Positions 2,260 through 63,199 of a stretch of DNA of 64,000 nt are shown piece by piece. The DNA is taken from the IMG/VR virus record IMGVR_UViG_3300023174_000046, positions 124,001 through 188,000 of that record; one strand, written 5' to 3'. A model generated the notes under the pieces. It saw nothing but the letters and a program-made list of their open reading frames with translations, searched no databases and was not told where the DNA came from. Position 1 is the first letter of the stretch, and each line of letters begins with the position of its first letter. The position numbers and the translations under genes were made by a program.

Positions 2260-2270
2260 TAAATAACTAG

Positions 2271-2741
2271 ATGGCAACGCTACCATACATATATGCCGAT
2301 TCATTATCAGGTTCTATCAAATATCTCGGAGAATGTTATGTTACAACAGGTAATAGCGGCATTATTAATGCTAAAAAAGAAGAATTTGTTGATTCACAAG
2401 ATTGTAATATCTGCTTAGGCCAATCGCCTTTCCCTTTACTTACACCAACACCTACAATTTCCCTTACACCAGATCCTACAAGAACTGTCACACCAACACC
2501 TACTGTAACTCCAACCGTGACCCCTACAGTAACACCCACTGTTACTCCTACGGTAACACCAACTGTTACACGCACACCAACACCTACAGTAACACCCACT
2601 GTTACTCCTACGGTAACACCAACTGTTACACGCACACCAACACCCACGGTAACACCGACAATTACCATCACACCTACAATTTCTCTTACACCTACTGTTA
2701 CACGAACACCAACACCTACAGTAACACCTACTAAACCATAA
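2271..2741 (+). CDS. Small protein with a Cys-containing head and a mucin-like (TPTV)n tail
   Basis: N-terminal CY...DCNIC, then about 100 aa of PT/TV repeats; TAAATA 5 nt upstream of the ATG. Confidence 0.75.
2523..2644 (+). repeat. Perfect 60-bp tandem duplication within the PT-repeat coding region
   Basis: Sequence lines starting at 2521 and 2581 are identical except for one base. Confidence 0.9.
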
Positions 2742-2744
2742 TAT

Positions 2745-4187
2745 ATGAACCTTTCAGCATCCAGATCCTTTTCTCTATTACCTACAGATCAATTATCGCC
2801 CGAAAATGACATTCTTGTTTCATTTGATTACGTAACAAATGTTTATGATAACTATCAAAATGTTTATGATAATGAAACACCGTCTGAGGGGTTTTGTTTG
2901 TTTTTTTACGAGGGCAATGCACCTCTTGGTGGTGGTGCGCCTGGTTCTGGCTTAGGGTATCTCCCCGACTCTTTTGCTGTAACAAATAATAATAATATTC
3001 TTTTTAGCGAATTTAACAATACTTTTATATCTTATAATCTCACAGCATATGGTACAGTCAATAACATGCCCGCATATAGAGGTGACTCATCTAGATTGAG
3101 CGGTGCTAAAATCGATTTTTATACTTCAGGTTACAATGGTCTCTTTCCTAGTACTTCCGGTTGGCGCATCTGGGATGGTACAAACAAATATTTTTACTAT
3201 AGTGACAGTAATGTATTGTATCCAATGTGGGCTGTTAACTGGAATAATGGGCCTGATATTCAATCGGGCTGGGGATACCCTTTAATTACCAGAAAAGATA
3301 TTGGATACAGTTATGCAGGTAAAGCTGGAAGCTTATTGGGAATTGGTTTTGATTTTACTGGTAATTTCAGAACCGCATACAACTCACCTGTGACAGGAAG
3401 CCCTGTTATTAATAATGTTACTATTAGAAACGGTGATTATACCTACCTCACAAATTCAACCAATCTTACTTCCACAAATTTTTTATACCCAACTATTCTT
3501 TGGAATAGTTTGACAAATAGCGGTCTACCCAATATTGGTAACCGCGTAAAAGTTAGATTAACGGATCTCGGCAGAACTATTAATGTAAAAATGCGCCCCT
3601 ACGGCATTGAGGAATACGTGGATGTATTAACTTATAGTTCTTTAAATTTAGGCCCAGGAAATACAACAGATAGTATTAAAGTAGGTTTAAATTTTTCTTC
3701 ACTTAATAATACAGATTTCGGTATTCGTAATTTCAATATTGCAGGGGTAGCTGCAACACCTACTGCAACACCAACACCAACATCAACAGTTACACCAACT
3801 GTTACACCTACACAAACAGTTACACCAACTGTAACACCTACACGAACTGTGACACCAACACCTACACGAACAGCTACACCAACAGTTACACCAACAATTA
3901 CTATCACGCGCACCCCAGGTATTACACCGACTGCAACTCCAACAGTTACACCTACAGCTACTGTCACACCAACAGCAGGCGCTACATCCACGCCTACACC
4001 TACTGTGACACCAACTGCAACACCGCCACCTTCACAGACACCTACTACAACACCAACACCTACAGTTACAGTAACTGCAACACCAACACCTACTGTGACA
4101 CCTACACCAACTGCGCCACCATCACCGTTCCCTGACGGCACTGTTCTGGCCAACGGTGTTATTGTTGGATTTGGAAGAACCCCATAA
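2745..4187 (+). CDS. L-type (legume) lectin-like domain with an inserted module, plus a long Pro/Thr stalk
   Basis: [18 protein letters not shown] and LLGIGFD..GNF match lectin-fold motifs and are separated by about 110 aa; PT repeats at about 3751-4125. Confidence 0.65.
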
Positions 4188-4199
4188 ATATCTTAATAT

Positions 4200-5642: not shown

Positions 5643-5675
5643 TAGCATTTTACACTTATTGTAGTAAAATAAAGT

Positions 5676-12575: not shown

Positions 12576-12587
12576 TTAAATAATAGT

Positions 12588-13277: not shown

Positions 13278-13305
13278 AAAGTATTGAAATTCATAAATAT
13301 TTTAG

Positions 13306-18476: not shown

Positions 18477-18484
18477 TATAAATA
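18477..18484 (+). promoter_or_regulatory. T4-type late promoter TATAAATA (representative of about 18 TAAATA sites)
   Basis: Exact T4 gp55 consensus 5 nt before the ATG; same geometry at 2260, 12577, 13294, 19454, 37127, 38094, 40074, 41609, 44008, 50507. Confidence 0.8.
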
Positions 18485-19450: not shown

Positions 19451-19464
19451 CATTAAATATTTTT

Positions 19465-23401: not shown

Positions 23402-24160
23402 ATGTATACAGACATTCAATTAGTATCTACGCTTAATAAAAAATATCTACCTGGCGCGCGAGCCTTTTTACGAAGTCTAGTCAAGCATAATAAAATTAAT
23501 TATCTTTATAATTTTTTTATTTTTGAAGAAATTAGCAGTTCAGACAAAGAGTCTCTCCAATGCATTTATCCTTCCGTAAATTTTATTGAAATAGATACAG
23601 AAGACTACTCTTACTATAATACTAATGATGTTTTTCGAAATTGGGGGTTCAATTGTTTTAATAGATTTGAGATTTTTACTTTAAAGTGTAAAAAATTGAT
23701 TTTTTTTGATTTAGATATGATTGTATTAGATTCATTAGAAGATATATTTACTAGTGATGTACGCTTTGGTTCTGTCGAAATAGAACCTTTCGGTAGACTA
23801 GATCACCCAACAAAAAGAATGTTTGATGGTGGTTTAATGGTAATCTCAGAAGAGTTTTTAACTCATAAGACAAAAAATAAGTTAATTGAAATATCTAAAC
23901 TGAAAAAATGGTCTAGTGATGAGCCAGTTTTAAATTTATTTTTTGAAAATGATGTTACTTTTTTACCTAAAAAATACAATATATTAAGCTACGAATATAA
24001 CAAACACAAGAATAATTGTAGCGTTTTGCAATATGTCGGTACTAAAAAACCATGGGCAGGTAAAACTATCGAAAGCAATTTTGATAATTATGTAATTAAA
24101 AGAAATAAAATTACAGATCTTATGAAGATACAACACATTTTTAATCAATATGCAAATTAA
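23402..24160 (+). CDS. GT8 glycosyltransferase
   Basis: YLPGA..SL, IFFDLDMIV, FDGGLMV, DEPVLN, YN, YVGTKKPW. Confidence 0.85.
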   Translation: MYTDIQLVSTLNKKYLPGARAFLRSLVKHNKINYLYNFFIFEEISSSDKESLQCIYPSVNFIEIDTEDYSYYNTNDVFRNWGFNCFNRFEIFTLKCKKLIFFDLDMIVLDSLEDIFTSDVRFGSVEIEPFGRLDHPTKRMFDGGLMVISEEFLTHKTKNKLIEISKLKKWSSDEPVLNLFFENDVTFLPKKYNILSYEYNKHKNNCSVLQYVGTKKPWAGKTIESNFDNYVIKRNKITDLMKIQHIFNQYAN

Positions 24161-24893
24161 TTCATTCTATTTTGGTAAAAAATTAAATCTTATGGAACAA
24201 CTCACTATAGTGAGCTTTCTTAATCAGGGGCATAGCTTTAAGCTATATACATATGATAATAATATTTGTGATATCAAACATAATAGTTTTAATATCATTG
24301 ATGCAAATGAAATTTTAGATAAAAAGTACTTCTTTACATATGACGGCAAGGGTGATTGTCCCGCTAATAGCGTTGGTGGTTTTTCAGATATTTTTAGATT
24401 TTCTATTTTAGAAAAAAATCAAGGCTGGTATGTAGATATGGATGTGACTTGTTTGAAAGACTTCAATCATTTAGATCAATTACCATGTGTATTTCGGCCA
24501 AATAAAAATTATGGAGCTGTCGCAAACATTATTAAATGCGAGAACAAGCAGTTAATTAGTGAAATACTAGCCCAGTATAAAGAATGTATAACTCCAATGA
24601 ATAACGAATGGGTTAAACCTCTTAATATTTTTTATGAACTAATTAAAAACCATAATCTAGAAAATTATATAATTGATAAAAAAATATTTGGTGATGATAA
24701 TGCATCGGACCTACTCAACTTTATTAATAAAAATATTTACGAACTTAATAATGTACCTGAATACGCTATACACTGGTGCAATACTGCATGCACAACTGCA
24801 TCTTGGAATAAGCGGCTAAAAATAGACTGGAATAATCCAAGACCTGCGTCCCTGTACTATTGTTTACTTAAAAAGAACGGCTTAATTAATTAG
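24150..24893 (+). CDS. GT32-like DxD glycosyltransferase
   Basis: SFL..GH..LYTY, DANEIL, FSDIFRF..L, GWYVDMDV, HW. Confidence 0.8.
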   Translation: MQINSFYFGKKLNLMEQLTIVSFLNQGHSFKLYTYDNNICDIKHNSFNIIDANEILDKKYFFTYDGKGDCPANSVGGFSDIFRFSILEKNQGWYVDMDVTCLKDFNHLDQLPCVFRPNKNYGAVANIIKCENKQLISEILAQYKECITPMNNEWVKPLNIFYELIKNHNLENYIIDKKIFGDDNASDLLNFINKNIYELNNVPEYAIHWCNTACTTASWNKRLKIDWNNPRPASLYYCLLKKNGLIN

Positions 24894-24895
24894 TT

Positions 24896-25639
24896 ATGAT
24901 ATCGATAGCTTGTGTTTCTGATTCTGGTTATTTACGCTACGCAAAAGCTATGTTTAAATCTTTTAATTACAAACATCAAAAATTACAGAAACATATGCTA
25001 TATGTAGGTAATAAACAAGAGTATGTAAACGAAGCAATTAATATGCATTACGATGGTACACAGCTTTCTGATGTGAAAGATATAATTAAAGATACGAATA
25101 CCGAAGATAATGAGTACAAGCAGTACTTTACAAATAGTACTTTTTTATCAGAAAAAAACTGCTACTGTAATAATCAGAGATTCAAATTCATAAGCAATTT
25201 ATTAGAAGCAAATACAAGAAATTTAATTTTTACAGATGCAGATATGCTATGCAACCGCAATGTAGATTTTTTAAAAGCCATTTCATACAAAAGAGATATT
25301 TGCTTACAACCATATTTTGAAGATAAAAAATATTACAGGACAAATTTTTGCTATATTAATAATACACCTGCGACGAGAGACTTTTTTAAGATGGTTTCTG
25401 TAGGTATAGAGAAAGATTTTGGTCTATTAAAATGGGGTCATACAAAATATTTTACTGAATTAATAAAGCAATCAAATTTAAAGGTATTAGACCTGCCAGA
25501 AAATTTTATTGATACTAATTATAGTGCTGATAGTTATATCTGGTCAGGAGAAAGTTTTAGAAAAGATAAAAATATGGTAAACCTATCAACTAAAAATTTT
25601 AATTATATTAACAAATATGAAAGTTATTATGAATCATGA
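24896..25639 (+). CDS. GT-A nucleotide-diphospho-sugar transferase
   Basis: RF..., FTDADM DxD motif; position within the GT cluster. Confidence 0.6.
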   Translation: MISIACVSDSGYLRYAKAMFKSFNYKHQKLQKHMLYVGNKQEYVNEAINMHYDGTQLSDVKDIIKDTNTEDNEYKQYFTNSTFLSEKNCYCNNQRFKFISNLLEANTRNLIFTDADMLCNRNVDFLKAISYKRDICLQPYFEDKKYYRTNFCYINNTPATRDFFKMVSVGIEKDFGLLKWGHTKYFTELIKQSNLKVLDLPENFIDTNYSADSYIWSGESFRKDKNMVNLSTKNFNYINKYESYYES

Positions 25640-27992: not shown

Positions 27993-28016
27993 TATTATAA
28001 GTAGTTATTGTAGTAT
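27989..28016 (+). promoter_or_regulatory. sigma70-like promoter opening the amidinotransferase operon
   Basis: TTGATA-N16-TAGTAT, 6 nt before the ATG. Confidence 0.6.
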
Positions 28017-28022
28017 AAACTT

Positions 28023-30527: not shown

Positions 30528-30528
30528 C

Positions 30529-33400: not shown

Positions 33401-33634
33401 ATGGATATTGAATTGTTTGGATGGTTTTCTACATTCTTTCTTTGGGGTGCTGCTCTACCCAAGCAAAGGCATGTATTGCATCTCTGTACAGCCATAGCAG
33501 CTTTGTCTCGTGCGGTCTATATTATAACCTTGTACCTGGGGCCTACAGGTAATCTCGCTAGGCCATTGATAATAAATTGGATAGCGCTATTTGTTATTCA
33601 CCTATATCAGTACTTTGTATATAAAAATAAATAA
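33401..33634 (+). CDS. Small membrane protein with about 3 TM segments
   Basis: Hydrophobic segments; ELFGW start; within the operon. Confidence 0.55.
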   Translation: MDIELFGWFSTFFLWGAALPKQRHVLHLCTAIAALSRAVYIITLYLGPTGNLARPLIINWIALFVIHLYQYFVYKNK

Positions 33635-34017: not shown

Positions 34018-34333
34018 TTTTATAATAGGGTTTTTATCGACAAGTAGTTTACTGCTACTTTGGTTTTATTCTTCTTTAAAGATTACTTTAGCAGAAATCT
34101 TTTTTAATGAGAAAATTACAAATAATGATCAATTTGAAGACTTAATTATGATTCGTCTAAAAAATGAAAAACTATCACATTTATCAAGTTGTTATATTTG
34201 CATGAGTTTTTGGACATCATTTCTTGTAGGATGTCTTTTAACGTTTTTGGGTAGCCCCAACTATACCCCTGTCATTACATTCTTGACTTACCCCTGCTTG
34301 TGTTATATAATGAAGAAATATGTCTTTGATTGA
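34004..34333 (+). CDS. DUF1360-like membrane protein
   Basis: TM segments with SCYICMSFW (CxxCxSxW). Confidence 0.6.
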   Translation: MELSNFIIGFLSTSSLLLLWFYSSLKITLAEIFFNEKITNNDQFEDLIMIRLKNEKLSHLSSCYICMSFWTSFLVGCLLTFLGSPNYTPVITFLTYPCLCYIMKKYVFD

Positions 34334-35709: not shown

Positions 35710-35896
35710 AGATTCTTACAACGACAAACAAAATCTTATTGTCAAAATTGACGGTAAAGAGGTTGGTATCTTATACATTGACGAAGATCAGAAGTTTGAT
35801 TTACTTAAGATTCTACGCAGAGGCAAAGATGAAGACACTGAATTAATTGAGCCTCAAGAGCTGGACGACCTTGATGAAGACGGTGAAGAGTATTAA
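35684..35896 (+). CDS. Small acidic hypothetical protein
   Basis: ORF with an acidic C-terminus, tightly packed. Confidence 0.55.
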   Translation: MKSIEIEVKDSYNDKQNLIVKIDGKEVGILYIDEDQKFDLLKILRRGKDEDTELIEPQELDDLDEDGEEY

Positions 35897-35903
35897 ATAA
35901 TAA

Positions 35904-36742: not shown

Positions 36743-37129
36743 GTGCCTTCACCAACACCGACTGTCACTCCGACGCCCACAGTAACGCCAACTTTAACTG
36801 TAACTGCTACGCCTGCTCCCACTATGACTTCAACCCCTACGGCCACATATACTCCACCACCCACACAAACGCCAACCGCTACCAGTTTTTCTACACCCCT
36901 TCAAGTAGATGAAATGAAAACTACATCAAATAGCAGACTAGAAGGCACCATATATTGGAGTAAAATGAAATGGGATCTGCCTACATTGACGCCTACACCA
37001 CAGGCACAAGAAAGTGAAAAAATAGAACAAAAAGAAATAAATAGTGAAAATTTTATTCGTATAACCGACAACACCCCATCAGTATTTGATAGTAAAAACA
37101 AGCTGTCATATTTTAAAAAGATTGATTAA
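36743..37129 (+). CDS. Pro/Thr mucin-like ORF, probably the -1 frameshift extension of the upstream membrane protein
   Basis: -1 frame open from 36710 (AAA GTA ATA TTT GAC GAA...) through the PT repeats. Confidence 0.6.
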   Translation: MPSPTPTVTPTPTVTPTLTVTATPAPTMTSTPTATYTPPPTQTPTATSFSTPLQVDEMKTTSNSRLEGTIYWSKMKWDLPTLTPTPQAQESEKIEQKEINSENFIRITDNTPSVFDSKNKLSYFKKID

Positions 37130-37137
37130 ATATTATT

Positions 37138-38104: not shown

Positions 38105-38287
38105 ATGCCAAGCAGTAAACCAACACCCAAACCTACACACAAGGTTATTGATTCAAGTAACAACAATAAAGAATTGGCTAAAAAAGCCATATATAACGGT
38201 GATATGAGTCATATCATTCATTACTGCAAGCTCCGTGGTATTAAACTAGAAGATTACCTAGGAACATCTGAAGTAGATGATAAGTAA
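38105..38287 (+). CDS. Small hypothetical late protein
   Basis: TAAATA upstream; directly precedes the portal gene. Confidence 0.5.
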   Translation: MPSSKPTPKPTHKVIDSSNNNKELAKKAIYNGDMSHIIHYCKLRGIKLEDYLGTSEVDDK

Positions 38288-38300
38288 TTTAACTTAATTT

Positions 38301-40076
38301 ATGGCAACAGAAGGCTCAGGTGGATTCGGAAGACAACTATATAAGTTTATTAGCAATAAACTGCCTTATACTTCTTATAATATTCTCGATAAATTTGATG
38401 AGTTGAACCCAAAGTTTAAATTGTTCCACGATCAAGGAACATCCAGGCAGGAAGCTTTGCAAAGACAGAGCATTTCTTCTTCTACAAGTTACGGTGATGA
38501 TCAAGTTGCGAATGTGATGCGCGAATCGCAATTCTATCAATACATGTACGCAAACGTACAAACTGATAAACCTAAGCGCATGATGGATTACAGAATCATG
38601 GCAGCATTTTCAGAAGTTGCAGATGCATTGGATGAGATTTGTGATGAGTGTGTTAATAAGAATGATAAAGGTGAAATTGTTAAACTTACTTTTAATGTTT
38701 CAGAAGATTTTGAAGCAACAGTAAAGGAAAGTCTTTCACGTGAATTTGACCGCTACATCAATTACTTTAACCTTGAAGCTAATGGTTGGGAATATTTTAG
38801 AAGAATGCTTGTTGAAGCTGAGTTATATTTTGAGCATGTTATTCATAAAAGATTTCCACAAGAAGGTGTTCTGGGTGTTGTATCTGTTCCAAGTGAATTA
38901 ATTGATCCTATCTTTTCTAATGTACAGAACATGCTTGTAAAGGGCTTCTTGCTTAGAAAGCCAATCATGGATCCACAAAATCCTCTTAAGATTAAAGACT
39001 ACAAGATGATCCCGATGGACAAGAATCAGATAACATATATCAATTCTGGTATATGGAACGAAAATAAGACGCTCCGTCTTCCATTCATTGAGAATGCTCG
39101 TCGTGCTTATCGTCAGTTATCTTTGATTGAAGATTCAATCGTAATTTATAGATTAGTTAGAGCACCAGAACGTTTGATCTTTAATGTGGATGTGGGTAAC
39201 ATGTCGCCACCAAAAGCTGAGGCTTATCTGCGCAAGCTCATGAGCAATTATTGGTCCAAGAGAACATTTGATATTGACCAGAGTGCAACTGTGCAGAAGT
39301 TTAACCCACAATCAATGTTGGATAGCTTCTGGTTTGCCAAGCGTGCTGGCAGCGATGGTACCAATGTTACCTCGTTACCTGGTGGTCAGAATCTCGGTGA
39401 GTTGACTGACTTGATGTACTTTGTTAAGAAACTCTATAAAGCTCTTAAAGTACCAACTACAAGATTGAATCCAGAAGATCAATACCAAGGTGGTGAAAAT
39501 ATTCTTCGTGAAGAGTTAAAGTTTGCAAAATTTGTTGTACGGTTGCAACAGAGATTTGCTTTAGGTTTGAAGAACGGTTTTATTACACATCTAAAGCTTA
39601 AAGAGTTGTGGGACAAGCATAAACTCAAAGAACATCACCTCGATCTCACTTTTAACCCACCATCTAACTTTTATGAACTCAGAGAACAACAGAAACTCGA
39701 ACTCAAAGCTAAGACATTTAATGATTTCTCTCAAAACGATAGTGTCTCAAAGACTTACGCACAAAAGCGTTATCTTGGATGGACTGAGAAAGAAATTATG
39801 GCTAACCGTGAATTCTTACGTAAAGATAAAGAATTCTCATGGGAACTTGCACAAATTGAAGCAGCAGGTCCAGCATGGCAAAAAGCTATTGCAGCAGGTG
39901 GCGAGCCAGCGGCTGCAGAAGGTGGTGCTGAAGCCGGTGGTGGTGCGCCTCCCGCGTTTGGACCAGGTACTGCAGCTGTCAGTGGCGGGGCAGAAGCAGG
40001 CGCGGCTCCTGAGGCTCCAGCAGCTGGTGCAGAAGCAGGTGCGGCCGCAGCAACTCCTGAAGCACCTGCAGCATAA
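38301..40076 (+). CDS. gp20: T4-like portal vertex protein gp20
   Basis: YR.MA..EV.DALDEI, QLSLIEDSIVIYRLVRAPERLIFNVDVGNMSPPKAEAYL, LPGGQNL, KKLYKALKVP, REELKF. Confidence 0.97.
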   Translation: MATEGSGGFGRQLYKFISNKLPYTSYNILDKFDELNPKFKLFHDQGTSRQEALQRQSISSSTSYGDDQVANVMRESQFYQYMYANVQTDKPKRMMDYRIMAAFSEVADALDEICDECVNKNDKGEIVKLTFNVSEDFEATVKESLSREFDRYINYFNLEANGWEYFRRMLVEAELYFEHVIHKRFPQEGVLGVVSVPSELIDPIFSNVQNMLVKGFLLRKPIMDPQNPLKIKDYKMIPMDKNQITYINSGIWNENKTLRLPFIENARRAYRQLSLIEDSIVIYRLVRAPERLIFNVDVGNMSPPKAEAYLRKLMSNYWSKRTFDIDQSATVQKFNPQSMLDSFWFAKRAGSDGTNVTSLPGGQNLGELTDLMYFVKKLYKALKVPTTRLNPEDQYQGGENILREELKFAKFVVRLQQRFALGLKNGFITHLKLKELWDKHKLKEHHLDLTFNPPSNFYELREQQKLELKAKTFNDFSQNDSVSKTYAQKRYLGWTEKEIMANREFLRKDKEFSWELAQIEAAGPAWQKAIAAGGEPAAAEGGAEAGGGAPPAFGPGTAAVSGGAEAGAAPEAPAAGAEAGAAAATPEAPAA

Positions 40077-40084
40077 ATAATTAG

Positions 40085-41162: not shown

Positions 41163-41615
41163 ATGTTCGTTAAAAACGACAGATACAATCAAGGCATTTA
41201 CAAGCCGATCAATCCACAAAAATACAGAGGCAAAGGATATGCCATATATCGCTCTGGATACGAATTAAAATTCTTCAAATGGTGTGATATGAATTCCAGA
41301 GTGCTTGAGTGGGGTAGCGAGAATTTTGTAATACCATATCTCAATCCTCTGGATAGTAAGTATCATCGATATTTTGTTGATAACTATGTAAAGATCAAAT
41401 TAGATAACAATATAATAGAAAAGTATCTAATAGAGATAAAGCCTTTTAAACAAACGCTTAAACCTGTTAAAGGTAATAAGAAAAATACAACGTTTATCTA
41501 TGAAGCTAAAACATATGTTCAGAACCGTGCTAAATGGGATGCTGCAAAAGCCTTCTGTGATCAAAAGGGTTTTAAGTTTTTAATCATTACAGAGAACGAG
41601 CTAAACATTAAATAA
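41163..41615 (+). CDS. gp4: T4-like head completion nuclease gp4 (TnsA-like)
   Basis: QGIYKPINPQKYRG, YRSGYE, WGSE..IPY, HRYFVD, EIKP, AKWDAA, ITE. Confidence 0.92.
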   Translation: MFVKNDRYNQGIYKPINPQKYRGKGYAIYRSGYELKFFKWCDMNSRVLEWGSENFVIPYLNPLDSKYHRYFVDNYVKIKLDNNIIEKYLIEIKPFKQTLKPVKGNKKNTTFIYEAKTYVQNRAKWDAAKAFCDQKGFKFLIITENELNIK

Positions 41616-42332: not shown

Positions 42333-43946
42333 ATGATCCTCGAGGCTATAGATGGCAGTATATTAATTGCGCTTGATGATGCAATCTTACTAGATGTAGG
42401 AAGTACACCGCCCGCTCCAGACACAAATTATACAGAACTCCCACAAGGTGAACCTCTTACACTTTCACTTCAAAGTTACAACTTGTTAAGAACCAACGGT
42501 GTGTATTTGTGTGGAGCTGATTATTCATCAGTAACTGATTATTTGAGTACAGGGTTTTTCGATGGTTACGTAAATGTTGAAGATTTTAAAAACACAAAAA
42601 GTTTATCTGGGTATTTTCCTTCGTTCTCTGCATATAAAATTTCAACAAATGCATACAGAGTAGCAAATAATAATATTATTGATGTAAAGTTACCGCCAGT
42701 AGCAATTTCATACGATACAGATGCATCGTTTAATATTATTGTAAAAAATACAGGTGGGTATAGTAAGAGCAGGTTATATTACCCAGCTAGCATCGAACCT
42801 TCACCAACGCCCACACTAACTGTCACACCAACTGTCACACCAACTGTCACACCTACAGTAACGCCATCTGCAACACTCCCACCCCCTTTACCAAAGAAAT
42901 TGCTTAGCACAGGAAACAATTTATATGGTCAATTGGGATTGGGCAACAGTGGTGCTAGTACAAGCAGAAACACTCTCACTCCATTGACTGGCAATTGGTT
43001 ACAGGTCACATGTGGGTATTGGCACACCATGGCGCTGTCTGCTGGTGCTACAAAATGGTTTAGCGCAGGAAGCAATTTCAGTGGTCAATTAGGATTAGGA
43101 TTGGAATTTGGTAACACCAGAAGCACATTCACTCCATTGACTGGCAATTGGAGTCAGATGGCATGTGGTCACAGCTACACCATGGCACTGTCTGCTGGTA
43201 CTACTCGGTTGTTTGGCACAGGACTCAATTCCTTTGGTGGTTTTGGATTGGGTGATACAGTTCGGAGAAACACCTTCACTGCACTGACTGGCAACTGGTC
43301 CCAGATGGCATGTGGTGTGGGTCACACCATAGCATTAAGTGCAGATACAGACAGGTGGTTTATCACAGGAGACAATTTCAGCGGTCAATTAGGCTTAGGT
43401 GACAGTGGCAGCGCTACTGATAGACTCACTTTTATAGCATTGACTGGCAATTGGTCACAAGTCAGATGTGGTGGGTATCACACCATGGCACTGTCTGCTG
43501 GTACTACTCGGTTGTTTGGCACAGGAAACAATAGCAGCGGTCAATTGGGATTGAGCGACACAACTAATAGAAACACTTTCACTGCATTGACTGGCAATTG
43601 GTCACAAGTCATATGTGGAAGCGAACTTACCATAGCATTAAGTGCAGATACAGACAGGTGGTTTATCACCGGGCGGAATGACAATGGTCAATTGGGATTG
43701 GGTGATACAGTTCAGAGAAACACCTTCACTGCATTGACTGGCAATTGGTCACAGTTTGCATGTGGTAGGTTTCACACCATGGCACTGTCTGCTGGTACCG
43801 ATGCATGGTTTGGCACAGGAAACAATAGCAGCGGTCAATTGGGATTGGGTGATACAGTTCAGAGAAACACCTTCACTGCATTGACTGGCAATTGGTTACA
43901 ATTCATATGTGGAAGCGAACACACCATGGCATTGAGCGCTACATAA
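42333..43946 (+). CDS. Ig-like domain, PT stalk and 7-bladed RCC1/BLIP-II beta-propeller
   Basis: Seven G.N..GQLGLG....R.TF..LTGNW.Q..CG..HT.ALS repeats after a TPTV linker. Confidence 0.9.
   Translation: MILEAIDGSILIALDDAILLDVGSTPPAPDTNYTELPQGEPLTLSLQSYNLLRTNGVYLCGADYSSVTDYLSTGFFDGYVNVEDFKNTKSLSGYFPSFSAYKISTNAYRVANNNIIDVKLPPVAISYDTDASFNIIVKNTGGYSKSRLYYPASIEPSPTPTLTVTPTVTPTVTPTVTPSATLPPPLPKKLLSTGNNLYGQLGLGNSGASTSRNTLTPLTGNWLQVTCGYWHTMALSAGATKWFSAGSNFSGQLGLGLEFGNTRSTFTPLTGNWSQMACGHSYTMALSAGTTRLFGTGLNSFGGFGLGDTVRRNTFTALTGNWSQMACGVGHTIALSADTDRWFITGDNFSGQLGLGDSGSATDRLTFIALTGNWSQVRCGGYHTMALSAGTTRLFGTGNNSSGQLGLSDTTNRNTFTALTGNWSQVICGSELTIALSADTDRWFITGRNDNGQLGLGDTVQRNTFTALTGNWSQFACGRFHTMALSAGTDAWFGTGNNSSGQLGLGDTVQRNTFTALTGNWLQFICGSEHTMALSAT
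42900..43943 (+). repeat. Seven near-identical ~150-bp RCC1 repeat units
   Basis: Recurring DNA such as ggtcaattgggattgggtgatacagttcagagaaacaccttcactgcattgactggcaattgg. Confidence 0.9.
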
Positions 43947-44019
43947 TAATTGTATAGTTTCTTAAATGGTCTTTAATTTTAGACAAGTTATTCGTAAGGA
44001 ATTTTAATAAATATATACA

Positions 44020-48725: not shown

Positions 48726-48753
48726 TTGACTACATTGAACGTTCCTTTATAAT
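48726..48753 (+). promoter_or_regulatory. sigma70-like early promoter
   Basis: TTGACT-N16-TATAAT in the gap after the fibre gene. Confidence 0.75.
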
Positions 48754-48760: not shown

Positions 48761-49261
48761 ATGAAATCAAAAGTACTTACTTGTATTGTGTCTGGTATTG
48801 AGAAGCGGGTGTCTGGCAGTACCATGAACAAACAATCATTAAAGTTTGGCAATGAAGAACAGTTTGAAAGTCATTTTGTTTGTCGAGAAGCCAAGCAACT
48901 ACTCAAGAAACGCATTCAACCTGATCAAGTACAAGCACAATTGCTTCCCAAAGGCAAAAGACCATTCAGTATTGATCTAGTAGCATTGGCTCGTCTCAAG
49001 CTTCTCAAGAAACCCAAGTCAGAAAAAAGCAAAGCCAGTACTAATATTGTTTTTGAGCCAACAGGGCCCAGAGAATTTGATAGCTTTCGCGCTTATGTGG
49101 AAGAAATGACTGGTGGCAAGAATCGCTGTCAAGTGGTGCAAGGCGGCACATGCATTCGACCAGACATTTATTATGATAATGAATTCAGTAAGCAGGGCAA
49201 TTGTTACACCTGCACATACAAAGAGTTTTGTTTGTGTGCCAATAAAAAAGTGTTGATGTAA
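48761..49261 (+). CDS. Cys-rich hypothetical early protein (start probably MKSKV)
   Basis: LTCIVSG, FVCREAK, C-terminal CIRPD..C..C..C.C; the ATG at 48752 lies inside the -10 box. Confidence 0.6.
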   Translation: MKSKVLTCIVSGIEKRVSGSTMNKQSLKFGNEEQFESHFVCREAKQLLKKRIQPDQVQAQLLPKGKRPFSIDLVALARLKLLKKPKSEKSKASTNIVFEPTGPREFDSFRAYVEEMTGGKNRCQVVQGGTCIRPDIYYDNEFSKQGNCYTCTYKEFCLCANKKVLM

Positions 49262-49287
49262 AGCACTTTTACCGGTATAATACTTGT

Positions 49288-49840: not shown

Positions 49841-50146
49841 ATGTTTAAAAAAGAATTAAATATTGATATGGAGTTGCCAGAGAAACTTAAAGATCAAGAG
49901 GCTTTGGTCAAGTGGTATGTCAAAGGAATTAACCGTAAAATTTTTACAGCTAAATTCATTGATCCGGTTTCTGCATCAGAAGCTGCCACAAGAATTTTAG
50001 AGACTGAAATGAGAGCCAACGATAAGATTACACTGGCGAAAAAGATTGATGTATATGGCACTCACAAAAACTCAAAAGTGCATACTTTTGACCCAGATAT
50101 TATTGCCGCAAATGCAGGCTACTATTCTCTTAAAAAAAATAATTGA
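49841..50146 (+). CDS. Hypothetical protein, likely paralogous to 53431-53721
   Basis: Shares W.(V/I), AAT...E and (I/V)ANAG with 53431-53721. Confidence 0.55.
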   Translation: MFKKELNIDMELPEKLKDQEALVKWYVKGINRKIFTAKFIDPVSASEAATRILETEMRANDKITLAKKIDVYGTHKNSKVHTFDPDIIAANAGYYSLKKNN

Positions 50147-50170
50147 TTATTATTTTGAATATATTATAAT
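50143..50170 (+). promoter_or_regulatory. sigma70-like promoter
   Basis: TTGATT-N16-TATAAT. Confidence 0.7.
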
Positions 50171-50466: not shown

Positions 50467-50503
50467 GATCCCCGTATATGGCAACTATACGGGGATCTTT
50501 TTT
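50467..50503 (+). terminator. Rho-independent terminator
   Basis: GATCCCCGTATA-tggcaac-TATACGGGGATC followed by T6. Confidence 0.9.
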
Positions 50504-50517
50504 GTATAAATAACAAC

Positions 50518-50799
50518 ATGGACAAGTTCGAAGATCTTCCAGACTCTGAAGAAACATATCCAGAAGATGAAGAATACATATACTCTGCAAACACCATAAA
50601 AGAGATATTAGAAAAGTTTCGAAACAAATATAATGAACGGTTGGATCCTAATTTTAATCCTGATCTATGGCTGGAAGATTTTACTATATACGATTATGTT
50701 ATAGAAGTGCAAAAGCGTAACATGAACAAGTTTGATAAACTTACTGATCAAGGTTACAAGCTAGACTACATGACTGGTGAGTTTAAACTATCTGCTTGA
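50518..50799 (+). CDS. Acidic hypothetical late protein
   Basis: Perfect TATAAATA 5 nt upstream. Confidence 0.6.
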   Translation: MDKFEDLPDSEETYPEDEEYIYSANTIKEILEKFRNKYNERLDPNFNPDLWLEDFTIYDYVIEVQKRNMNKFDKLTDQGYKLDYMTGEFKLSA

Positions 50800-50829
50800 A
50801 AGTTTTGAGATTTCCTTCATAATTCTTGC

Positions 50830-51256: not shown

Positions 51257-51312
51257 AATTATATTTATGAAGAAAAGCTGTTATATCTCAAGAAAACACA
51301 TATAATATTCAT

Positions 51313-51843: not shown

Positions 51844-51935
51844 GCGCGGGTGGTGAAACGGCGAAACACATCTGGCTTAAGATCAGATACGGATTAATGA
51901 TCACACTGTGGGTTCAAATCCCACCCCGCGTACCA
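51844..51935 (+). tRNA. trnL: tRNA-Leu(UAA) with encoded CCA
   Basis: Acceptor GCGCGGG/CCCGCGT-A-CCA; anticodon arm TCTGG-CTTAAGA-TCAGA; long variable arm; T arm GTGGG-TTCAAAT-CCCAC. Confidence 0.95.
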
Positions 51936-52372
51936 TTTAAAAGCTGCAAAGCTCTAGAATAATTAGCGCCCCTAGGACTTAATTTAACCGCTATTAACGC
52001 CTGTCTAATATTAGAAGTATTTTTAAGTGCTTTCAAAAGCCTATCATTTGATACTTTTTTCTTTCCACTGTTTTTATTTTTTCCTTTGTATGTTTTGGTT
52101 TGACTGTGACAGTTGGGGCATAAAAATCTTAGATTATCTAAAGTATTATTAAACGTATCACCATCAATGTGATCTAAATCTAGATTTATTGGTTTACCTC
52201 TCCATTCGGTCATATTGCAATGATTGCATTTATACTTTCTGCCTGATGTTAATAAAATTTTCTTTAAAGCATGATTAGATAAAAAAGGCTGATTTGCTTG
52301 CTTAGCCCTTTGTAGAGCTTTAGCCCTTTTGGCTTCTATAGATTTTTGCCTTTGCTCATTATTCCAACTCAT
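51914..52372 (-). mobile_element. Free-standing HNH homing endonuclease gene overlapping the tRNA 3' end antisense
   Basis: CNHC..W.GKPI.LDLDHIDGD..NN.LDNLRFLCPNCHSQT. Confidence 0.9.
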
Positions 52373-52461
52373 ACCAATATTTATGAGACATATATTATAA
52401 ATTTTGTGTGTTGCACTATTTTAATTTTCATGCATAATAAGCATGAACAATAAGGAGATAT

Positions 52462-52758
52462 ATGGATAACATAGATGCATTGTGTGATCAAATAGAATTG
52501 TACAACAAGAACTATGAATGGATTATCAGAGAATCAGAACGTATTCTTGTGGAGATGAACAAACTTGATAAAATGGAAACATTTCAAGCAGACAAGTATG
52601 AAGCGCTTTCACGAAAACATCTGGAGCTACAACAACGTTATAGTAGAGATAAAGATAATTACAATCAAATGATTAAAGCGGTGCGATCCTATTTCAATGA
52701 AAATCATGGCATTGATATAATAGGGTTGCTGGAAGGTGATATTGATGAGGTTAAATAA
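52462..52758 (+). CDS. Coiled-coil hypothetical protein
   Basis: AAGGAG Shine-Dalgarno upstream; helical. Confidence 0.6.
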   Translation: MDNIDALCDQIELYNKNYEWIIRESERILVEMNKLDKMETFQADKYEALSRKHLELQQRYSRDKDNYNQMIKAVRSYFNENHGIDIIGLLEGDIDEVK

Positions 52759-55216: not shown

Positions 55217-55355
55217 ATAATATATTTATTAATAAACTGCATTGTATTCTAGGATTAGAAGGCCTAATAACATCCATTAGCAGCTTGCTTTAATAATAAT
55301 ATCTGTTATAAGTATAGGTATAAGAACAAATTAAAAAATATGAAAAATATTTCTA

Positions 55356-59436: not shown

Positions 59437-59437
59437 T

Positions 59438-60582: not shown

Positions 60583-60598
60583 GAGCAGACTAATTTAG

Positions 60599-60626
60599 TT
60601 GACTACTTCGTATTTTCCTGCATAAT
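60599..60626 (+). promoter_or_regulatory. sigma70-like promoter for uvsE-rnh
   Basis: TTGACT-N16-CATAAT. Confidence 0.6.
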
Positions 60627-60633
60627 ATAAGAA

Positions 60634-61530
60634 ATGAAGTTATCTTTGTGCTGTCAGAGTAATGTGCTTAATGACAAAGGCATTAAATTTCGCACCATGA
60701 CTGTGACACAATTCAAGAAGAAGCCTCTCAATGAATCTTTAAATGTGTTGTGTCATAGAATTGTAGAGAACTTTCAAACACTCAAAGCTACAGTAGAATT
60801 ATGCAAAAGCATGAACCTGGCTGGCATGCGCATTGGCAGCGACTTGATACCTGTTATCAATCACCCAGATCTTAATTTAGACTTTTACAAATTACCCATG
60901 CAAGATGAAATGATGCATGCTATTGGTGAAGCTAAACAAGCCATGAAATGTTCTGGCTTACGCTTTTCTGCTCATCCTTCTGAGTTTATTAGCTTAACAT
61001 CCGATAACCCTAAAGTTGTTGCCAATAGCATTCGCGATCTGATTGCTCATGCATTAGTGTTTGAATTGCTTGCATTGCCTGAATCATATGAAGCACCATT
61101 GAACATTCATATTCGCAAAGATGGTGATCCTGAAACGATCTATGCCAATGTGGTGCGTAGTTTGAAGCAATGTCCTGTCAATGTGACCAAGCGATTGGTT
61201 TTTGAGAATAATGACAACAAGAAAGGTGTGTGGAGCATCAGCAATTTGGTAAAATATTTTCATGCTCGTGATGGCATACCCATCACTTTTGATAATTTGC
61301 ATCACAAAATGTTGCCTGGAGATCTATCAGAGTCTGAAGCATTTCACTTGGCACATGGCACATGGCCTGTGATGCCCATATTTCATTATTCAGAAGGCAT
61401 AGGTGACACACGCAAGCATGCAGATTACGCACAATATGCTCCTCCAGATTATGGCAAACCTGTGGTATGGGAAGTGGAGCTCAAAGCTAAGGATAGAGCT
61501 ATTAACAAGATCATGGGCATGATTTCATGA
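60634..61530 (+). CDS. uvsE: UV-damage endonuclease UvsE/UvdE
   Basis: RIGSDLIP, RFSAHP, LNIH, RLVFENND, FDNLHH, HYSE, HADY, VELKAKD. Confidence 0.93.
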   Translation: MKLSLCCQSNVLNDKGIKFRTMTVTQFKKKPLNESLNVLCHRIVENFQTLKATVELCKSMNLAGMRIGSDLIPVINHPDLNLDFYKLPMQDEMMHAIGEAKQAMKCSGLRFSAHPSEFISLTSDNPKVVANSIRDLIAHALVFELLALPESYEAPLNIHIRKDGDPETIYANVVRSLKQCPVNVTKRLVFENNDNKKGVWSISNLVKYFHARDGIPITFDNLHHKMLPGDLSESEAFHLAHGTWPVMPIFHYSEGIGDTRKHADYAQYAPPDYGKPVVWEVELKAKDRAINKIMGMIS

Positions 61531-62279
61531 ACATTCTCATCATTGATGCTACCAATTTGTTGTACCGCATTTATCATGTGTTGCGTGTCACTGGAGGGCA
61601 GGACATGGTGCCTGCATACATGCGCAGCATCAACAAGTATGTGCGTGATTTTGCACCTGATGCAACATATGCAGTGTCAGATAAGCGCTTGATCAAAGGG
61701 CAGAAGAATTACAGACGTCAACAAGCTGATTACAAGCAAAACAGAGACTGTAGCATGTGGGAAACTGTGCATGCTGCTGAAGATGAATTGGAGCAGGTCA
61801 TGCAAACACAAGGCATTCACATGATGTATCCAGGCATACTGGAAGCAGATGATGTAATTGCATTCTTGTGCAAACATTTGACTGGGCGCAAGACCATAGT
61901 ATCCACAGACAATGACATGGTGCAATTGATTGATGAACATACACAATTGTATTCACCCATCAAGAAGGTGATCATTGATGTGCACAATTGCGAACAGCAT
62001 TTGCCAGTGCATGTGAACAAGTATCTGCTATACAAGAGCATACTAGGTGATGCATCAGATTGCATCAAAGGGTTATCAGGTTATGGCAAAGTGAAAGCCA
62101 AGAGATTAACAGAAAATTATGATGCGGAGTTTGCAAAATTATCTGTTGAACTGCAACAGCAACAGCTCAATAACATGAGGCTCATGAACTTGAATCAAGG
62201 TCTTATAGAACATCCAGAAGAACGCAATTGTTACATGCAGCAATTGCAACAATTAACAACCCAGAGTGCTTGCAATTGA
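61527..62279 (+). CDS. rnh: T4 RNase H-like 5'-3' exonuclease
   Basis: IIDATNL, YKQNR, LEADDVIA, VSTDND, LGDASD.I.G..GYG.VKA. Confidence 0.88.
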   Translation: MNILIIDATNLLYRIYHVLRVTGGQDMVPAYMRSINKYVRDFAPDATYAVSDKRLIKGQKNYRRQQADYKQNRDCSMWETVHAAEDELEQVMQTQGIHMMYPGILEADDVIAFLCKHLTGRKTIVSTDNDMVQLIDEHTQLYSPIKKVIIDVHNCEQHLPVHVNKYLLYKSILGDASDCIKGLSGYGKVKAKRLTENYDAEFAKLSVELQQQQLNNMRLMNLNQGLIEHPEERNCYMQQLQQLTTQSACN

Positions 62280-62283
62280 GTTT

Positions 62284-63126
62284 CTATAGAAACTCACCAT
62301 TATGATTGTATTTAAAAGTATTCTCCATATTACCTCTAAACAAATCTACAAACGCGCCACAATTTCCTGTATGGTTTACAACATACTTGCATTCAGCTAC
62401 TAATCTTAATACTGCATCAAATATTTGTGCTTTAGCAATAGGGTCGTCATTGGTTTCTTCATGTATTATAAGCCAAGTAACTTTACTGGTATCTGTAACA
62501 ACTGCTTCATCAAAGTAAAAACATTTCTCACCAAACTCTTGTTTAAAAAAGTCTCGAACTTGCAGCTGATCTGTTTGAATTAAAACCCTACACTCCGGGT
62601 GAATATTGGTAAGTTTTTTGGTTTGCTCCAAGACATATTCTTTAGAAGGGAGACGACATTCAGTGTGTTTATCTGTGCCCCTATAAAATACAGATATGGT
62701 TCTTTCAAAATTAATATTATACTTAGAAATTAATTGCTGTTTAATTGTATTAATTTGATCGGAAGGTGAGAAAAAACAATTTAAAATTTTTGTATAATCT
62801 TCAAAATTATATAATTTTATTGTATCCAAGTTATATGTATTTGCACCATTAAATGAGTCGGGTAAGAATAAATTTTTATTAACAGGTAGCTCGTTAATAT
62901 TATAATTTGTTTTATAAAATAGAGGGTAAATGTCAAGATTCTTGTCTCTTTTAAAATACCAAAAACCTTGCGCATAATTTATTTTATCTGGTATTATACC
63001 ACTGTTAAGACACATAATAAGAGATAAAAATGTTTGGTAGGAATTAGAATAAAATCCGCTGTTCCATCTATTATAAATAATTTTTTGGCCGTTTTCTTCT
63101 TCTAGAGTGCAATTGCAAAGCTGCAT
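62284..63126 (-). CDS. NodZ/GT23-like glycosyltransferase, paralogue of 7508-8395
   Basis: SGFYSN, FFSPSD, YRGTDK..E, IQTD, HTGN. Confidence 0.65.
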   Translation of the reverse strand: MQLCNCTLEEENGQKIIYNRWNSGFYSNSYQTFLSLIMCLNSGIIPDKINYAQGFWYFKRDKNLDIYPLFYKTNYNINELPVNKNLFLPDSFNGANTYNLDTIKLYNFEDYTKILNCFFSPSDQINTIKQQLISKYNINFERTISVFYRGTDKHTECRLPSKEYVLEQTKKLTNIHPECRVLIQTDQLQVRDFFKQEFGEKCFYFDEAVVTDTSKVTWLIIHEETNDDPIAKAQIFDAVLRLVAECKYVVNHTGNCGAFVDLFRGNMENTFKYNHNGEFL

Positions 63127-63199
63127 TTAATTATTTATTCGGAAGTATATTTATTTGGAAGTATATTGCAATCATATCAAAATCCTATAATATATTCAT

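What the first reader, a model, noticed from the sequence alone, without database searches (positions are those of the whole stretch)
2260..63137. Late promoters sit 4-6 nt from start codons, implying leaderless late mRNAs
TAAATA lies 4-6 nt before the start codon at 2260, 12577, 13294, 18479, 19454, 33628, 35894, 37127, 38094, 40074, 41609, 44008 and 50507, and on the minus strand at 51262-67, 52378-83, 55223-28 and 63132-37. None has a Shine-Dalgarno. T4 gp55 promoters (TATAAATA) start transcription a few nt downstream, so +1 would fall on or next to the start codon. Leaderless translation could let phage mRNAs use 70S ribosomes and escape SD-dependent host shut-off. An alternative reading is that TAAATA acts as a translation-initiation element.
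Basis: partly seen in the sequence, partly recalled or inferred. Interest (0 to 1): 0.62.

Follow-up and report, generated by a model that had tools for sequence, protein, structure and literature searches.

The report
Promoters abutting start codons: leaderless phage genes
In this freshwater T4-like phage, both the late-promoter box and ordinary early promoters sit so close to start codons that transcription should begin on the ATG itself, so many of its messages probably have no leader and no ribosome-binding site; this layout is not seen in T4 and I found no published description of it in T4-like phages.

Summary
All 17 listed TAAATA boxes lie 4-6 nt before an ATG or GTG that opens a gene. 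Across the 217-kb phage genome, 46 of 275 gene starts carry TAAATA 5-6 nt upstream, against 13 of 8,043 other ATGs (odds ratio 124).

The box has the features of a T4-type gp55 late promoter:
- The consensus is (A)A-TAAATA-AT, with no -35 element and an AT-rich stretch downstream.
- A gp55 homologue is encoded.
- The annotated genes behind it are mostly virion or lysis genes.

T4's TATAAATA spans -13 to -6, so a 5-nt spacer puts +1 on the A of ATG.

Genes for replication and nucleotide or sugar metabolism carry full TTGACA-N16-18-TATAAT promoters, most often followed by 6 nt and then ATG. That also predicts +1 on the start codon.

Shine-Dalgarno sequences are nearly absent (17 of 275 genes). 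Another 109 genes overlap or abut the gene upstream.

The spacing is conserved in 76 related lake-phage loci. It also occurs in 10 of 62 genes of Pelagibacter phage HTVC008M, but not in T4 or Syn9.

No RNA data exist, so leaderless transcription is inferred and not shown. The idea that it lets the phage escape host shut-off is unsupported.

The parts
2260..2265 (+). Late-promoter core TAAATA, 5 nt before ATG 2271 (156-aa protein with a repeat domain shared with virion proteins)
4185..4190 (+). TAAATA 9 nt before ATG 4200 (480 aa).
12577..12582 (+). TAAATA 5 nt before GTG 12588 (229 aa)
13294..13299 (+). TAAATA 6 nt before ATG 13306 (1140 aa)
18479..18484 (+). TAAATA (full TATAAATA here) 5 nt before ATG 18490 (85 aa)
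19454..19459 (+). TAAATA 5 nt before ATG 19465 (644-aa baseplate wedge / tail fibre protein)
33628..33633 (+). TAAATA 4 nt before ATG 33638 (62 aa)
35894..35899 (+). TAAATA 4 nt before GTG 35904 (270 aa). Its TAA is the stop codon of the upstream gene
37127..37132 (+). TAAATA 5 nt before ATG 37138 (76 aa). Its TAA is the upstream stop codon
38094..38099 (+). TAAATA 5 nt before ATG 38105 (60 aa, directly upstream of the portal gene 38301-40076)
40074..40079 (+). TAAATA 5 nt before ATG 40085 (358 aa, gp13-like head-tail adaptor). Its TAA is the portal stop codon. The junction is conserved in relatives
41609..41614 (+). TAAATA 5 nt before GTG 41620 (235 aa, gp15-like tail sheath stabiliser; its N-terminus matches the start of the family profile)
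44008..44013 (+). TAAATA 6 nt before ATG 44020 (1565 aa; a paralogue elsewhere in the genome also has the box)
49857..49862 (+). TAAATA 5 nt before ATG 49868 (92 aa).
50507..50512 (+). TAAATA (TATAAATA) 5 nt before ATG 50518 (93 aa), just after a hairpin followed by a T-run
52752..52757 (+). TAAATA 5 nt before ATG 52763 (87 aa).
51262..51267 (-). TAAATA 5 nt before ATG at 51256 (63 aa)
52378..52383 (-). TAAATA 5 nt before ATG at 52372 (152-aa HNH endonuclease)
55223..55228 (-). TAAATA 6 nt before ATG at 55216 (247 aa)
63132..63137 (-). TAAATA 5 nt before ATG at 63126 (280 aa)
34283..34311 (+). Sigma70-type promoter TTGACT-N17-TATAAT, 8 nt before ATG 34320
48726..48753 (+). Sigma70-type promoter TTGACT-N16-TATAAT, 7 nt before ATG 48761
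49253..49281 (+). Sigma70-type promoter TTGATG-N17-TATAAT, 6 nt before ATG 49288 (95-aa ORF)
50143..50170 (+). Sigma70-type promoter TTGATT-N16-TATAAT, 6 nt before ATG 50177 (79-aa ORF)
50796..50823 (+). Sigma70-type promoter TTGAAA-N16-CATAAT, 6 nt before ATG 50830
60599..60626 (+). Sigma70-type promoter TTGACT-N16-CATAAT, 7 nt before ATG 60634
51301..51306 (+). TATAAT with no clear -35, 6 nt before ATG 51313. Divergent from the late box at 51262-67
63186..63191 (+). TATAAT with no clear -35, 8 nt before ATG 63200. Divergent from the late box at 63132-37

Best explanation
The window is part of a complete 217-kb T4-like myovirus from lake metagenomes. TAAATA is the core of its gp55-dependent late promoter, with consensus (A)A-TAAATA-AT and no -35 element. 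In T4 the equivalent box, TATAAATA, occupies -13 to -6. The modal 5-nt gap therefore places the transcription start on the A or G of the start codon, and gaps of 6-9 nt give leaders of 1-4 nt.

The early genes use host sigma70-type promoters (TTGACA-N16-18-TATAAT), most often followed by 6 nt and then ATG. That also puts +1 on the start codon.

The first gene of most transcription units would therefore be translated from a leaderless mRNA with no Shine-Dalgarno sequence, presumably by direct binding of a ribosome to the 5'-terminal AUG or GUG. Downstream genes mostly overlap or abut the preceding gene and would be reached by termination-reinitiation coupling.

Shown: the motifs, their spacing, their conservation, the gp55 gene and the split by gene class. 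Inferred: where transcription starts and how the messages are translated.
For: 1. Spacing. TAAATA lies 5 nt (32 genes) or 6 nt (14 genes) before gene starts, with an odds ratio of 124 against other ATGs.

2. Promoter-like context. Start-associated boxes differ from the 189 other TAAATA copies:
- A at -2 and -1: 0.52 and 0.59, against 0.25 and 0.23.
- A then T immediately after the box: 0.59 and 0.74, against 0.32 and 0.39.
- Almost no G in the first two positions after the box, and nothing conserved around -35.
This matches the T4 description: an 8-bp TATA box, an AT-rich stretch downstream, no -35, and the first T at -13 (PMC2988020).

3. gp55. A homologue lies at genome 75107-75646 (phrog_234, E = 1e-24; 41% identical to Syn9 gp55). 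It sits beside gp47/gp46 homologues, as the Syn9 gene does.

4. Gene classes.
- Box-bearing genes with an annotation: baseplate/tail fibre (two), gp13-like, gp15-like, gp21 protease, gp19 tube, gp25, lysozyme, virion proteins (two), two homing-type endonucleases, PhoH.
- Sigma70-class genes: DNA polymerase, gp41 helicase, another helicase, gp32, GTP cyclohydrolase, glycosyltransferase.

5. Independent geometry. An unbiased scan for TTGACA-N16-18-TATAAT (at most 2 mismatches) found 167 sites. 21 have ATG exactly 6 nt after the -10 box, against a background of about 3.5 per offset.

6. Start codons. The 60 box-bearing genes start with 49 ATG, 11 GTG and 0 TTG, so the predicted +1 is always a purine. 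In the other classes 12 of 181 starts are TTG (p = 0.04).

7. Family-profile matches begin within a few residues of the predicted N-termini, so the adjacent start codons look genuine (gp15-like, protease, DNA polymerase, GTP cyclohydrolase).

8. Conservation.
- In 76 loci of relatives (portal 61-85% identical), ATG follows TAAATA at offset 5 149 times and at offset 6 64 times, against about 20 at other offsets.
- At the junction after the portal gene, the box-to-ATG distance mostly stays at 5-6 nt while the distance from the portal stop codon to the box varies from 0 to about 20 nt.

9. Controls. In T4 and cyanophage Syn9 the box lies 2-73 nt upstream (mostly 20-30 nt), usually with an SD sequence between it and the start, and none lies at 4-7 nt.

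10. Genome-wide consistency. Of 161 genes not coupled to an upstream gene, 89 have an exact promoter at leaderless distance and 37 more have a relaxed version.
Against: - No transcript 5' ends are available. All 22 listed public runs, 20 of which hold part of the stretch, are DNA metagenomes.
- The host is unknown, so its ability to translate leaderless mRNA is assumed.
- gp33 and gp45, the T4 late co-activators, were not identified. Only the clamp loader gp44 was found.
- The major capsid gene has no box, and the portal and large terminase genes lack an exact one. They must be translated from internal positions on longer mRNAs without an SD, so an SD-independent internal initiation route exists and could also serve box-bearing genes.
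- 189 other TAAATA copies exist. The hexamer alone is not specific.
- 11 of 60 box-bearing genes start with GTG, which E. coli translates poorly on leaderless mRNA (my own knowledge, not checked here).
Confidence: 0.7

Rival explanations
1. TAAATA acts on the RNA as a non-SD translation-initiation element: an AU-rich enhancer or S1-binding standby site at -11 to -6. Transcripts would then start further upstream.
For: - The genome is almost SD-free, so some SD-independent internal initiation must exist. The major capsid gene is an example.
- Many boxes lie in 8-15-nt gaps inside runs of same-strand genes, where read-through mRNA would carry the box.
- A dual role is possible: promoter on the DNA, and unstructured AU-rich landing site on read-through RNA.
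Against: - Only 5 of the 114 genes that overlap or abut the upstream gene carry the box, yet those genes must be translated.
- Early genes carry a complete -35/-10 promoter in the same place, which leaves no room for a leader. Leaderless translation is therefore needed in this system anyway.
- The box is tied to late-type genes and not to genes in general.
- Its flanks match T4 late-promoter features.
- Start codons after the box are always purine-initial.
Confidence: 0.12
2. The pattern is a by-product of AT-rich intergenic composition plus TAA stop codons of tightly packed genes.
For: - In about 10 of 60 cases the TAA of the box is the stop codon of the upstream gene (8-nt gap). In a few more, a TAA overlaps or just precedes the box.
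- Regions upstream of starts are about 80% A+T.
Against: - Other offsets in the same AT-rich regions carry 0-5 boxes, against 32 at 5 nt.
- 19 box-bearing genes have no same-strand gene immediately upstream.
- In relatives the box keeps its distance to the ATG while its distance to the stop codon varies from 0 to 20 nt.
- T4 and Syn9, which are also compact and in T4's case AT-rich, show no such peak.
Confidence: 0.02
3. The box marks an RNA-processing site. An AU-specific endonuclease would cut polycistronic late RNA just upstream of each ATG and create leaderless or near-leaderless mRNAs after transcription.
For: - The sequence is AU-rich and single-strand-prone.
- It recurs between genes of long same-strand arrays.
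- The T4 review cautions that primer-extension 5' ends cannot tell initiation from processing.
Against: - It does not explain the match to the gp55-type consensus, or the boxes in divergent intergenic regions that have no upstream same-strand gene (19 cases).
- It does not explain why sigma70 promoters show the same geometry.
Confidence: 0.05
4. One reading: leaderless late mRNAs let the phage keep translating after it shuts off SD-dependent host translation.
For: - Only circumstantial. SD sequences are rare in the phage.
- The phage encodes a bS21-like ribosomal protein that could alter initiation.
Against: - Early genes, expressed before any shut-off, use the same layout.
- No shut-off factor was identified.
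- Pelagibacter phage HTVC008M mixes the layout with many SD-led genes.
- The simpler reading is adaptation to a host that initiates well without SD.
Confidence: 0.1

Closest known systems
T4 late promoters (gp55/gp33/gp45-dependent, TATAAATA at -13 to -6)
   Same: - Same core sequence, no -35 element, and an AT-rich stretch just downstream.
- About 50-70 copies per genome, on either strand.
- They precede virion and lysis genes.
- A gp55 homologue is encoded.
   Different: - In T4 the box lies 9-73 nt (mostly 20-30 nt) before the ATG, usually with a GGAG-type SD between them. 60% of T4 genes in the control region have an SD word.
- Here the gap is 5-6 nt and there is no SD.
- The two 5' positions of the octamer are looser here (A/T, then A).
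- gp33 and gp45 were not identified.
Pelagibacter phage HTVC008M and the pelagimyophages (Kyanoviridae-like phages of SAR11, including freshwater 'fonsimyophages')
   Same: - 10 of 62 annotated genes in the first 50 kb of HTVC008M have TAAATA 4-7 nt before the ATG. Several read TATAAATA-N5-ATG and precede baseplate or tail genes.
- That group is described as encoding ribosomal protein S21. This phage has a bS21-like ORF.
- Both are aquatic and low in GC.
   Different: - HTVC008M still has SD words before 40% of genes, against 6% here.
- This genome is about 70 kb larger.
- By portal sequence, the best-matching cultured phages are cyanophages at only about 35% identity.
- The pelagimyophage paper reports that late-promoter prediction failed in that group (PMC7029224), so the layout appears undescribed there.
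Leaderless mRNAs: lambda cI from PRM, and the large leaderless gene sets of Actinobacteria, Deinococcus-Thermus and archaea
   Same: - The promoter -10 element lies about 6-7 nt before the start codon.
- There is no SD.
- The predicted 5' end is an AUG or GUG.
   Different: - In those systems the start sites were mapped experimentally (for mycobacteria, PMC4633059, title and abstract listed; the lambda and other cases are from my own knowledge). Here the start is only predicted.
- The leaderless layout here is also driven by a phage sigma factor and covers about a third of a T4-like genome, which I did not find reported.
Cyanophage late promoters (for example Syn9, NATAAATA type)
   Same: Same core box, and a gp55 gene next to gp47/gp46.
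   Different: In Syn9 the box lies 2-68 nt from annotated starts, with none at 4-7 nt.

Membership tests
T4-type gp55-dependent late promoter | TATAAATA-like box | tested here: met
   The core TAAATA is preceded by A (0.59) and by A or T one position further up, giving (A/T)ATAAATA. In T4, A replaces T at -13 at 9 of 50 sites.
T4-type gp55-dependent late promoter | No conserved -35 element, and an AT-rich segment just downstream of the box | tested here: met
   Information content is about 0 from -40 to -4 relative to the box. The first two positions after the box hold 0-2% G, rising to 13% at the third.
T4-type gp55-dependent late promoter | The phage encodes the late sigma factor gp55 | tested here: met
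   Genome 75107-75646: phrog_234 'late sigma transcription factor', E = 1e-24; a weak Sigma70_r2 match; 41% identical to Syn9 gp55.
T4-type gp55-dependent late promoter | Co-activator gp33 and sliding clamp gp45 are present | tested here: inconclusive
   The Pfam gp45 models gave no hit, but they rang in none of the 14 control genomes either. Syn9 gp45 found nothing by tblastn. The clamp loader gp44 was found at genome 115002-115934. gp33 was not identified.
T4-type gp55-dependent late promoter | The box precedes late (virion, lysis) genes and not replication genes | tested here: met
   About 10 of the roughly 13 annotated box-bearing genes are virion or lysis genes, and none is a replication gene. 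Replication genes carry sigma70-type promoters.
T4-type gp55-dependent late promoter | Transcription starts about 6 nt after the box | not testable with these tools
   No RNA runs hold this phage.
T4-type gp55-dependent late promoter | Typical T4 layout: a 15-30-nt leader carrying an SD | tested here: not met
   The gap here is 5-6 nt and 2 of 60 genes have an SD word. In the T4 control, no box lies 4-7 nt before a start and 34 of 57 genes have an SD word. This is how the layout differs from T4; it does not rule out promoter identity.
Leaderless mRNA | The 5' end of the transcript coincides with the start codon (5'UTR of 0 to about 5 nt) | not testable with these tools
   Predicted only, from promoter geometry: T4 box at -13 to -6 and the sigma70 -10 element at -12 to -7 (textbook).
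Leaderless mRNA | No Shine-Dalgarno; AUG or GUG as the first codon | tested here: met
   SD words occur in 2 of 60 late-class and 0 of 34 early-class genes. Late-class starts are 49 ATG, 11 GTG and 0 TTG.
Sigma70-type promoter (early class) | TTGACA, a 16-18-bp spacer, then TATAAT | tested here: met
   34 genes carry such a promoter, with at most 1 mismatch allowed in the -10 box and 2 in the -35 box. The modal gap to the ATG is 6 nt.
Non-SD ribosome-binding motif (fixed-distance RNA motif used by most genes) | Present before most genes, including operon-internal ones | tested here: not met
   Only 5 of the 114 genes that overlap or abut the upstream gene carry the box. The major capsid gene lacks it.

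The most novel reading that the evidence does not exclude
A whole clade of aquatic T4-like phages (these lake phages, and to a lesser degree the SAR11 pelagimyophages) has largely given up leadered, SD-dependent translation. Nearly every transcription unit, early and late, would begin on its start codon. The phage-encoded bS21-like ribosomal protein would help retune host ribosomes toward leaderless or SD-independent initiation of phage messages.
Probability: 0.2. Interest if true: 0.8.

Novelty: new variant of a known kind. Interest (0 to 1): 0.62.

Why it matters
T4 is the textbook model for phage late transcription, and its messages are leadered and SD-driven. This clade of abundant lake phages, and a cultured SAR11 phage, place both late and early promoters directly against the start codons.
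- It would show that gp55-type transcription can be coupled to leaderless translation on a genome-wide scale.
- It may explain why late-promoter searches failed in pelagimyophages: tools expect a leader.
- It would improve start-codon and operon calling in metagenomic phage genomes.
- It points to the translation-initiation habits of streamlined, hard-to-culture freshwater and marine hosts.
- It is directly testable in the cultured HTVC008M / Pelagibacter system.

Tried and rejected
I therefore did not use read laying, because contigs cannot show transcript ends.
- gp45: Pfam PF09116 and PF02916 gave no hit, but their controls rang nowhere, so this is uninformative. tblastn with Syn9 gp45, gp62-like and RegA found nothing.
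- RegA (PF01818): no hit, with the same caveat.
- gp33: the 95-aa ORF upstream of the bS21-like ORF and the gp59-like gene gave no PHROG hit.
- Host identification: an exact-match scan with the core of the phage tRNA-Thr in one genome per prokaryote species found nothing. I did not pursue the host further, and it remains unknown.
- The phage tRNA-Met(CAT) is not an initiator type by inspection: a 1:72 pair is present and the anticodon stem has no GGG/CCC.
- Literature: searches combining leaderless with gp55, T4-like, late promoter, SAR11 or HTVC008M found no description of this layout. I recall that Thermus phage P23-45 has many leaderless transcripts, but I could not verify it in the held library, so I do not rely on it.
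- The run of ten genes of roughly 230-365 aa at window 23402-31308 is not a detectable paralogue family at E < 1e-8.

Full report
**What the window is.** The 64-kb window is bases 124001-188000 of a 217,413-bp virus record that CheckV rates complete. It has 35.7% GC. It is a distant T4-like myovirus. It encodes:
- a portal (phrog_213, E = 1e-104), gp13-like and gp15-like neck proteins, and baseplate and tail-fibre proteins;
- a major head protein, scaffold, sheath and large terminase;
- the gp21 protease and a lysozyme, and the gp19 tube and gp25;
- gp43 DNA polymerase, gp41 helicase and gp46/47;
- UvsX and UvsY, gp32 and a primase, and a gp44 clamp loader.

The best-matching cultured phages by portal sequence are cyanophages, at about 35% identity. 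The DNA is found in lake and freshwater metagenomes from several studies, and no listed holder is an RNA run.

**Checking the observation.** Each lies 4, 5 or 6 nt before an ATG or GTG that opens an ORF. I made my own gene calls for the whole genome, always taking the longest ORF so that start choice could not be biased by the motif; this gave 275 genes.
- The gap between TAAATA and the start codon is 5 nt in 32 genes, 6 nt in 14, 7-9 nt in 14, and 0-2 genes at any other offset.
- 16.7% of gene starts have the box at 5-6 nt, against 0.16% of the 8,043 other ATGs: odds ratio 124, p = 5e-58.
- Without using gene calls at all, 38 of the 258 TAAATA copies are followed by ATG at offset 5, where about 5 are expected.

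Other offsets in the same AT-rich upstream regions act as a composition control. G is depleted at -13 to -5 of all genes. SD-like words occur before only 17 of 275 genes, against 3.2% of random positions.

**What the box looks like.** Aligned on the box, start-associated copies read (A)A-TAAATA-A-T-(T). The first two positions after the box hold almost no G, and nothing is conserved around -35. The 189 copies not next to a start lack these flanks.

This matches the published description of T4 late promoters: an 8-bp TATA box about one helical turn before the start site, an AT-rich stretch downstream, no -35, about 50 sites on either strand, and the first T at -13 (PMC2988020). With the octamer at -13 to -6, five intervening bases put +1 on the first base of the start codon. 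That is the modal spacing here.

A gp55 homologue is encoded at genome 75107-75646, beside gp47/gp46 as in Syn9.

Many genes without TAAATA carry a complete sigma70-type promoter, TTGACA-N16-18-TATAAT, followed by 5-8 nt (most often 6) and then ATG.
- An unbiased scan allowing at most 2 mismatches found 167 sites genome-wide. 21 have ATG exactly 6 nt after the -10 box, against about 3.5 per offset otherwise.
- The -10 hexamer conventionally occupies -12 to -7, so this also puts +1 on the A of ATG.
- These promoters leave no room for a leader. If they work at all, their messages are leaderless. This is the strongest argument that leaderless translation operates in this phage-host pair.

**Classes and functions.** By strict criteria there are 60 late-class genes, 34 sigma70-class genes, 109 genes that overlap or lie within 5 nt of the upstream same-strand gene, and 72 others. 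Among the 109, 34 overlap by 4 nt, the size of an ATGA overlap.

With relaxed criteria 37 of those 72 also fit:
- the box at 7-15 nt;
- one mismatch in the box;
- a -10 element without a -35.

Of the 161 genes not coupled to an upstream gene, 89 have an exact promoter at leaderless distance.

Annotated late-class genes are virion or lysis genes, plus two homing-type endonucleases and PhoH. Annotated sigma70-class genes are DNA polymerase, two helicases, gp32, GTP cyclohydrolase and a glycosyltransferase.

Late-class starts are 49 ATG, 11 GTG and no TTG, so the predicted +1 is always a purine. PHROG profile matches begin within a few residues of several predicted N-termini, so these starts look genuine.

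**Relatives and controls.**
- In 76 IMG/VR loci whose portal is 61-85% identical, ATG follows TAAATA at offset 5 149 times and at offset 6 64 times, against about 20 at other offsets.
- At the junction after the portal gene, most relatives keep TAAATA 5-6 nt from the next ATG, while the distance from the portal stop codon to the box ranges from 0 (TAA shared) to about 20 nt. The box is therefore tied to the downstream start and not to the upstream stop.
- In T4's late region and in cyanophage Syn9, the box lies 2-73 nt before annotated starts, mostly 20-30 nt. It usually has an SD between it and the start, and it is never at 4-7 nt.
- In the first 50 kb of Pelagibacter phage HTVC008M, 10 of 62 annotated genes have the box at 4-7 nt, and several read TATAAATA-N5-ATG before tail or baseplate genes. 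That phage still has SD words before 40% of its genes.
- The pelagimyophage survey states that late-promoter prediction failed in that group and that S21 is characteristic of it (PMC7029224). This phage also has a bS21-like ORF.

**Interpretation.** The best-supported model has three parts:
- Early sigma70-type and late gp55-type promoters abut start codons.
- The first gene of each unit is translated leaderless.
- Later genes are translated by coupling.

I give this 0.70. The main caveats:
- There are no transcript ends.
- The host is unknown.
- gp33 and gp45 were not found.
- The major capsid, portal and terminase genes are clearly translated from internal, SD-less sites. An SD-independent internal route therefore exists, and the AU-rich box might also help on read-through RNA.

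A pure RNA-level role for the box is disfavoured (0.12). Only 5 of the 114 genes that overlap or abut the upstream gene carry it, and it is class-specific. A composition or stop-codon artefact is excluded by the positional controls and by the comparison across relatives. The shut-off-escape idea is unsupported, because early genes share the layout.

**Novelty.** T4-type late promoters, sigma70 promoters and leaderless mRNAs are each well known. A T4-like genome in which about a third of genes, early and late, sit directly against their promoters, with SD nearly absent, was not found in any paper I could search. I class it as a new variant of a known kind.

Noticed in passing
outside the window: genome 89399-89602 (+) = L102:1456-1659: A 67-aa ORF resembling ribosomal protein bS21. 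PF01165 scores 23.2 bits, below the 27-bit cut-off, and the nearest Atlas clusters are viral Ribosomal_S21. It lies just upstream of the gp59-like and gp32 genes, and has AAGGA 5 nt before its GTG, one of the few SD-like sites in the genome. It could be relevant to SD-independent initiation.
   Followed up: partly
window 51844-51935 (+) and 51914-52372 (-): A tRNA-Leu(TAA) of unusual length (92 nt). It overlaps by 22 nt the 3' end of an HNH endonuclease gene on the opposite strand, and that gene has a late-promoter box. The genome holds 16 tRNAs in all, including a 95-nt tRNA-Ile(TAT) at genome 190587-190681.
   Followed up: no
outside the window: genome 44355-45851 (-): The major capsid gene has no TAAATA box, no sigma70 promoter and no well-placed SD. 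A 77-nt AU-rich gap with a small hairpin precedes it, so its high-level translation must use another SD-independent route.
   Followed up: partly
L103 (Pelagibacter phage HTVC008M, NC_020484, 1-50000): 10 of 62 annotated genes have TAAATA 4-7 nt before the ATG (for example starts at 6280, 7562, 18943, 19456, 31132, 49760), alongside many SD-led genes. This is a cultured system in which the leaderless prediction can be tested.
   Followed up: partly
window 38270-38300, and relatives L023-L066: The portal gene lacks the box. In this phage and a subgroup of relatives it is preceded by a conserved TAAGTAAT 7-14 nt upstream, which in this phage includes the upstream gene's stop codon. In other relatives the portal has a normal TAAATA box 5-7 nt upstream.
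   Followed up: no
window 42333-43946 (+), and genome 4343-8440, 210048-211118, 213503-214009: A family of four paralogous proteins scattered over the genome. The window member matches RCC1-like repeat families, and two of the others match a 'virion structural protein' family. Three of the four carry the late box.
   Followed up: no
window 2440-2731, and genome 5582-7852, 68460-68960, 127756-128111: A DNA-level repeat of about 300 bp (68-75% identity) shared among several large late genes. It probably encodes a repeated structural domain (phrog_15511).
   Followed up: no
window 50470-50506: A GC-rich hairpin followed by a T-run (terminator-like) ends immediately before the TATAAATA box at 50505-50512. 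This looks like a compact terminator-promoter-start-codon junction.
   Followed up: no
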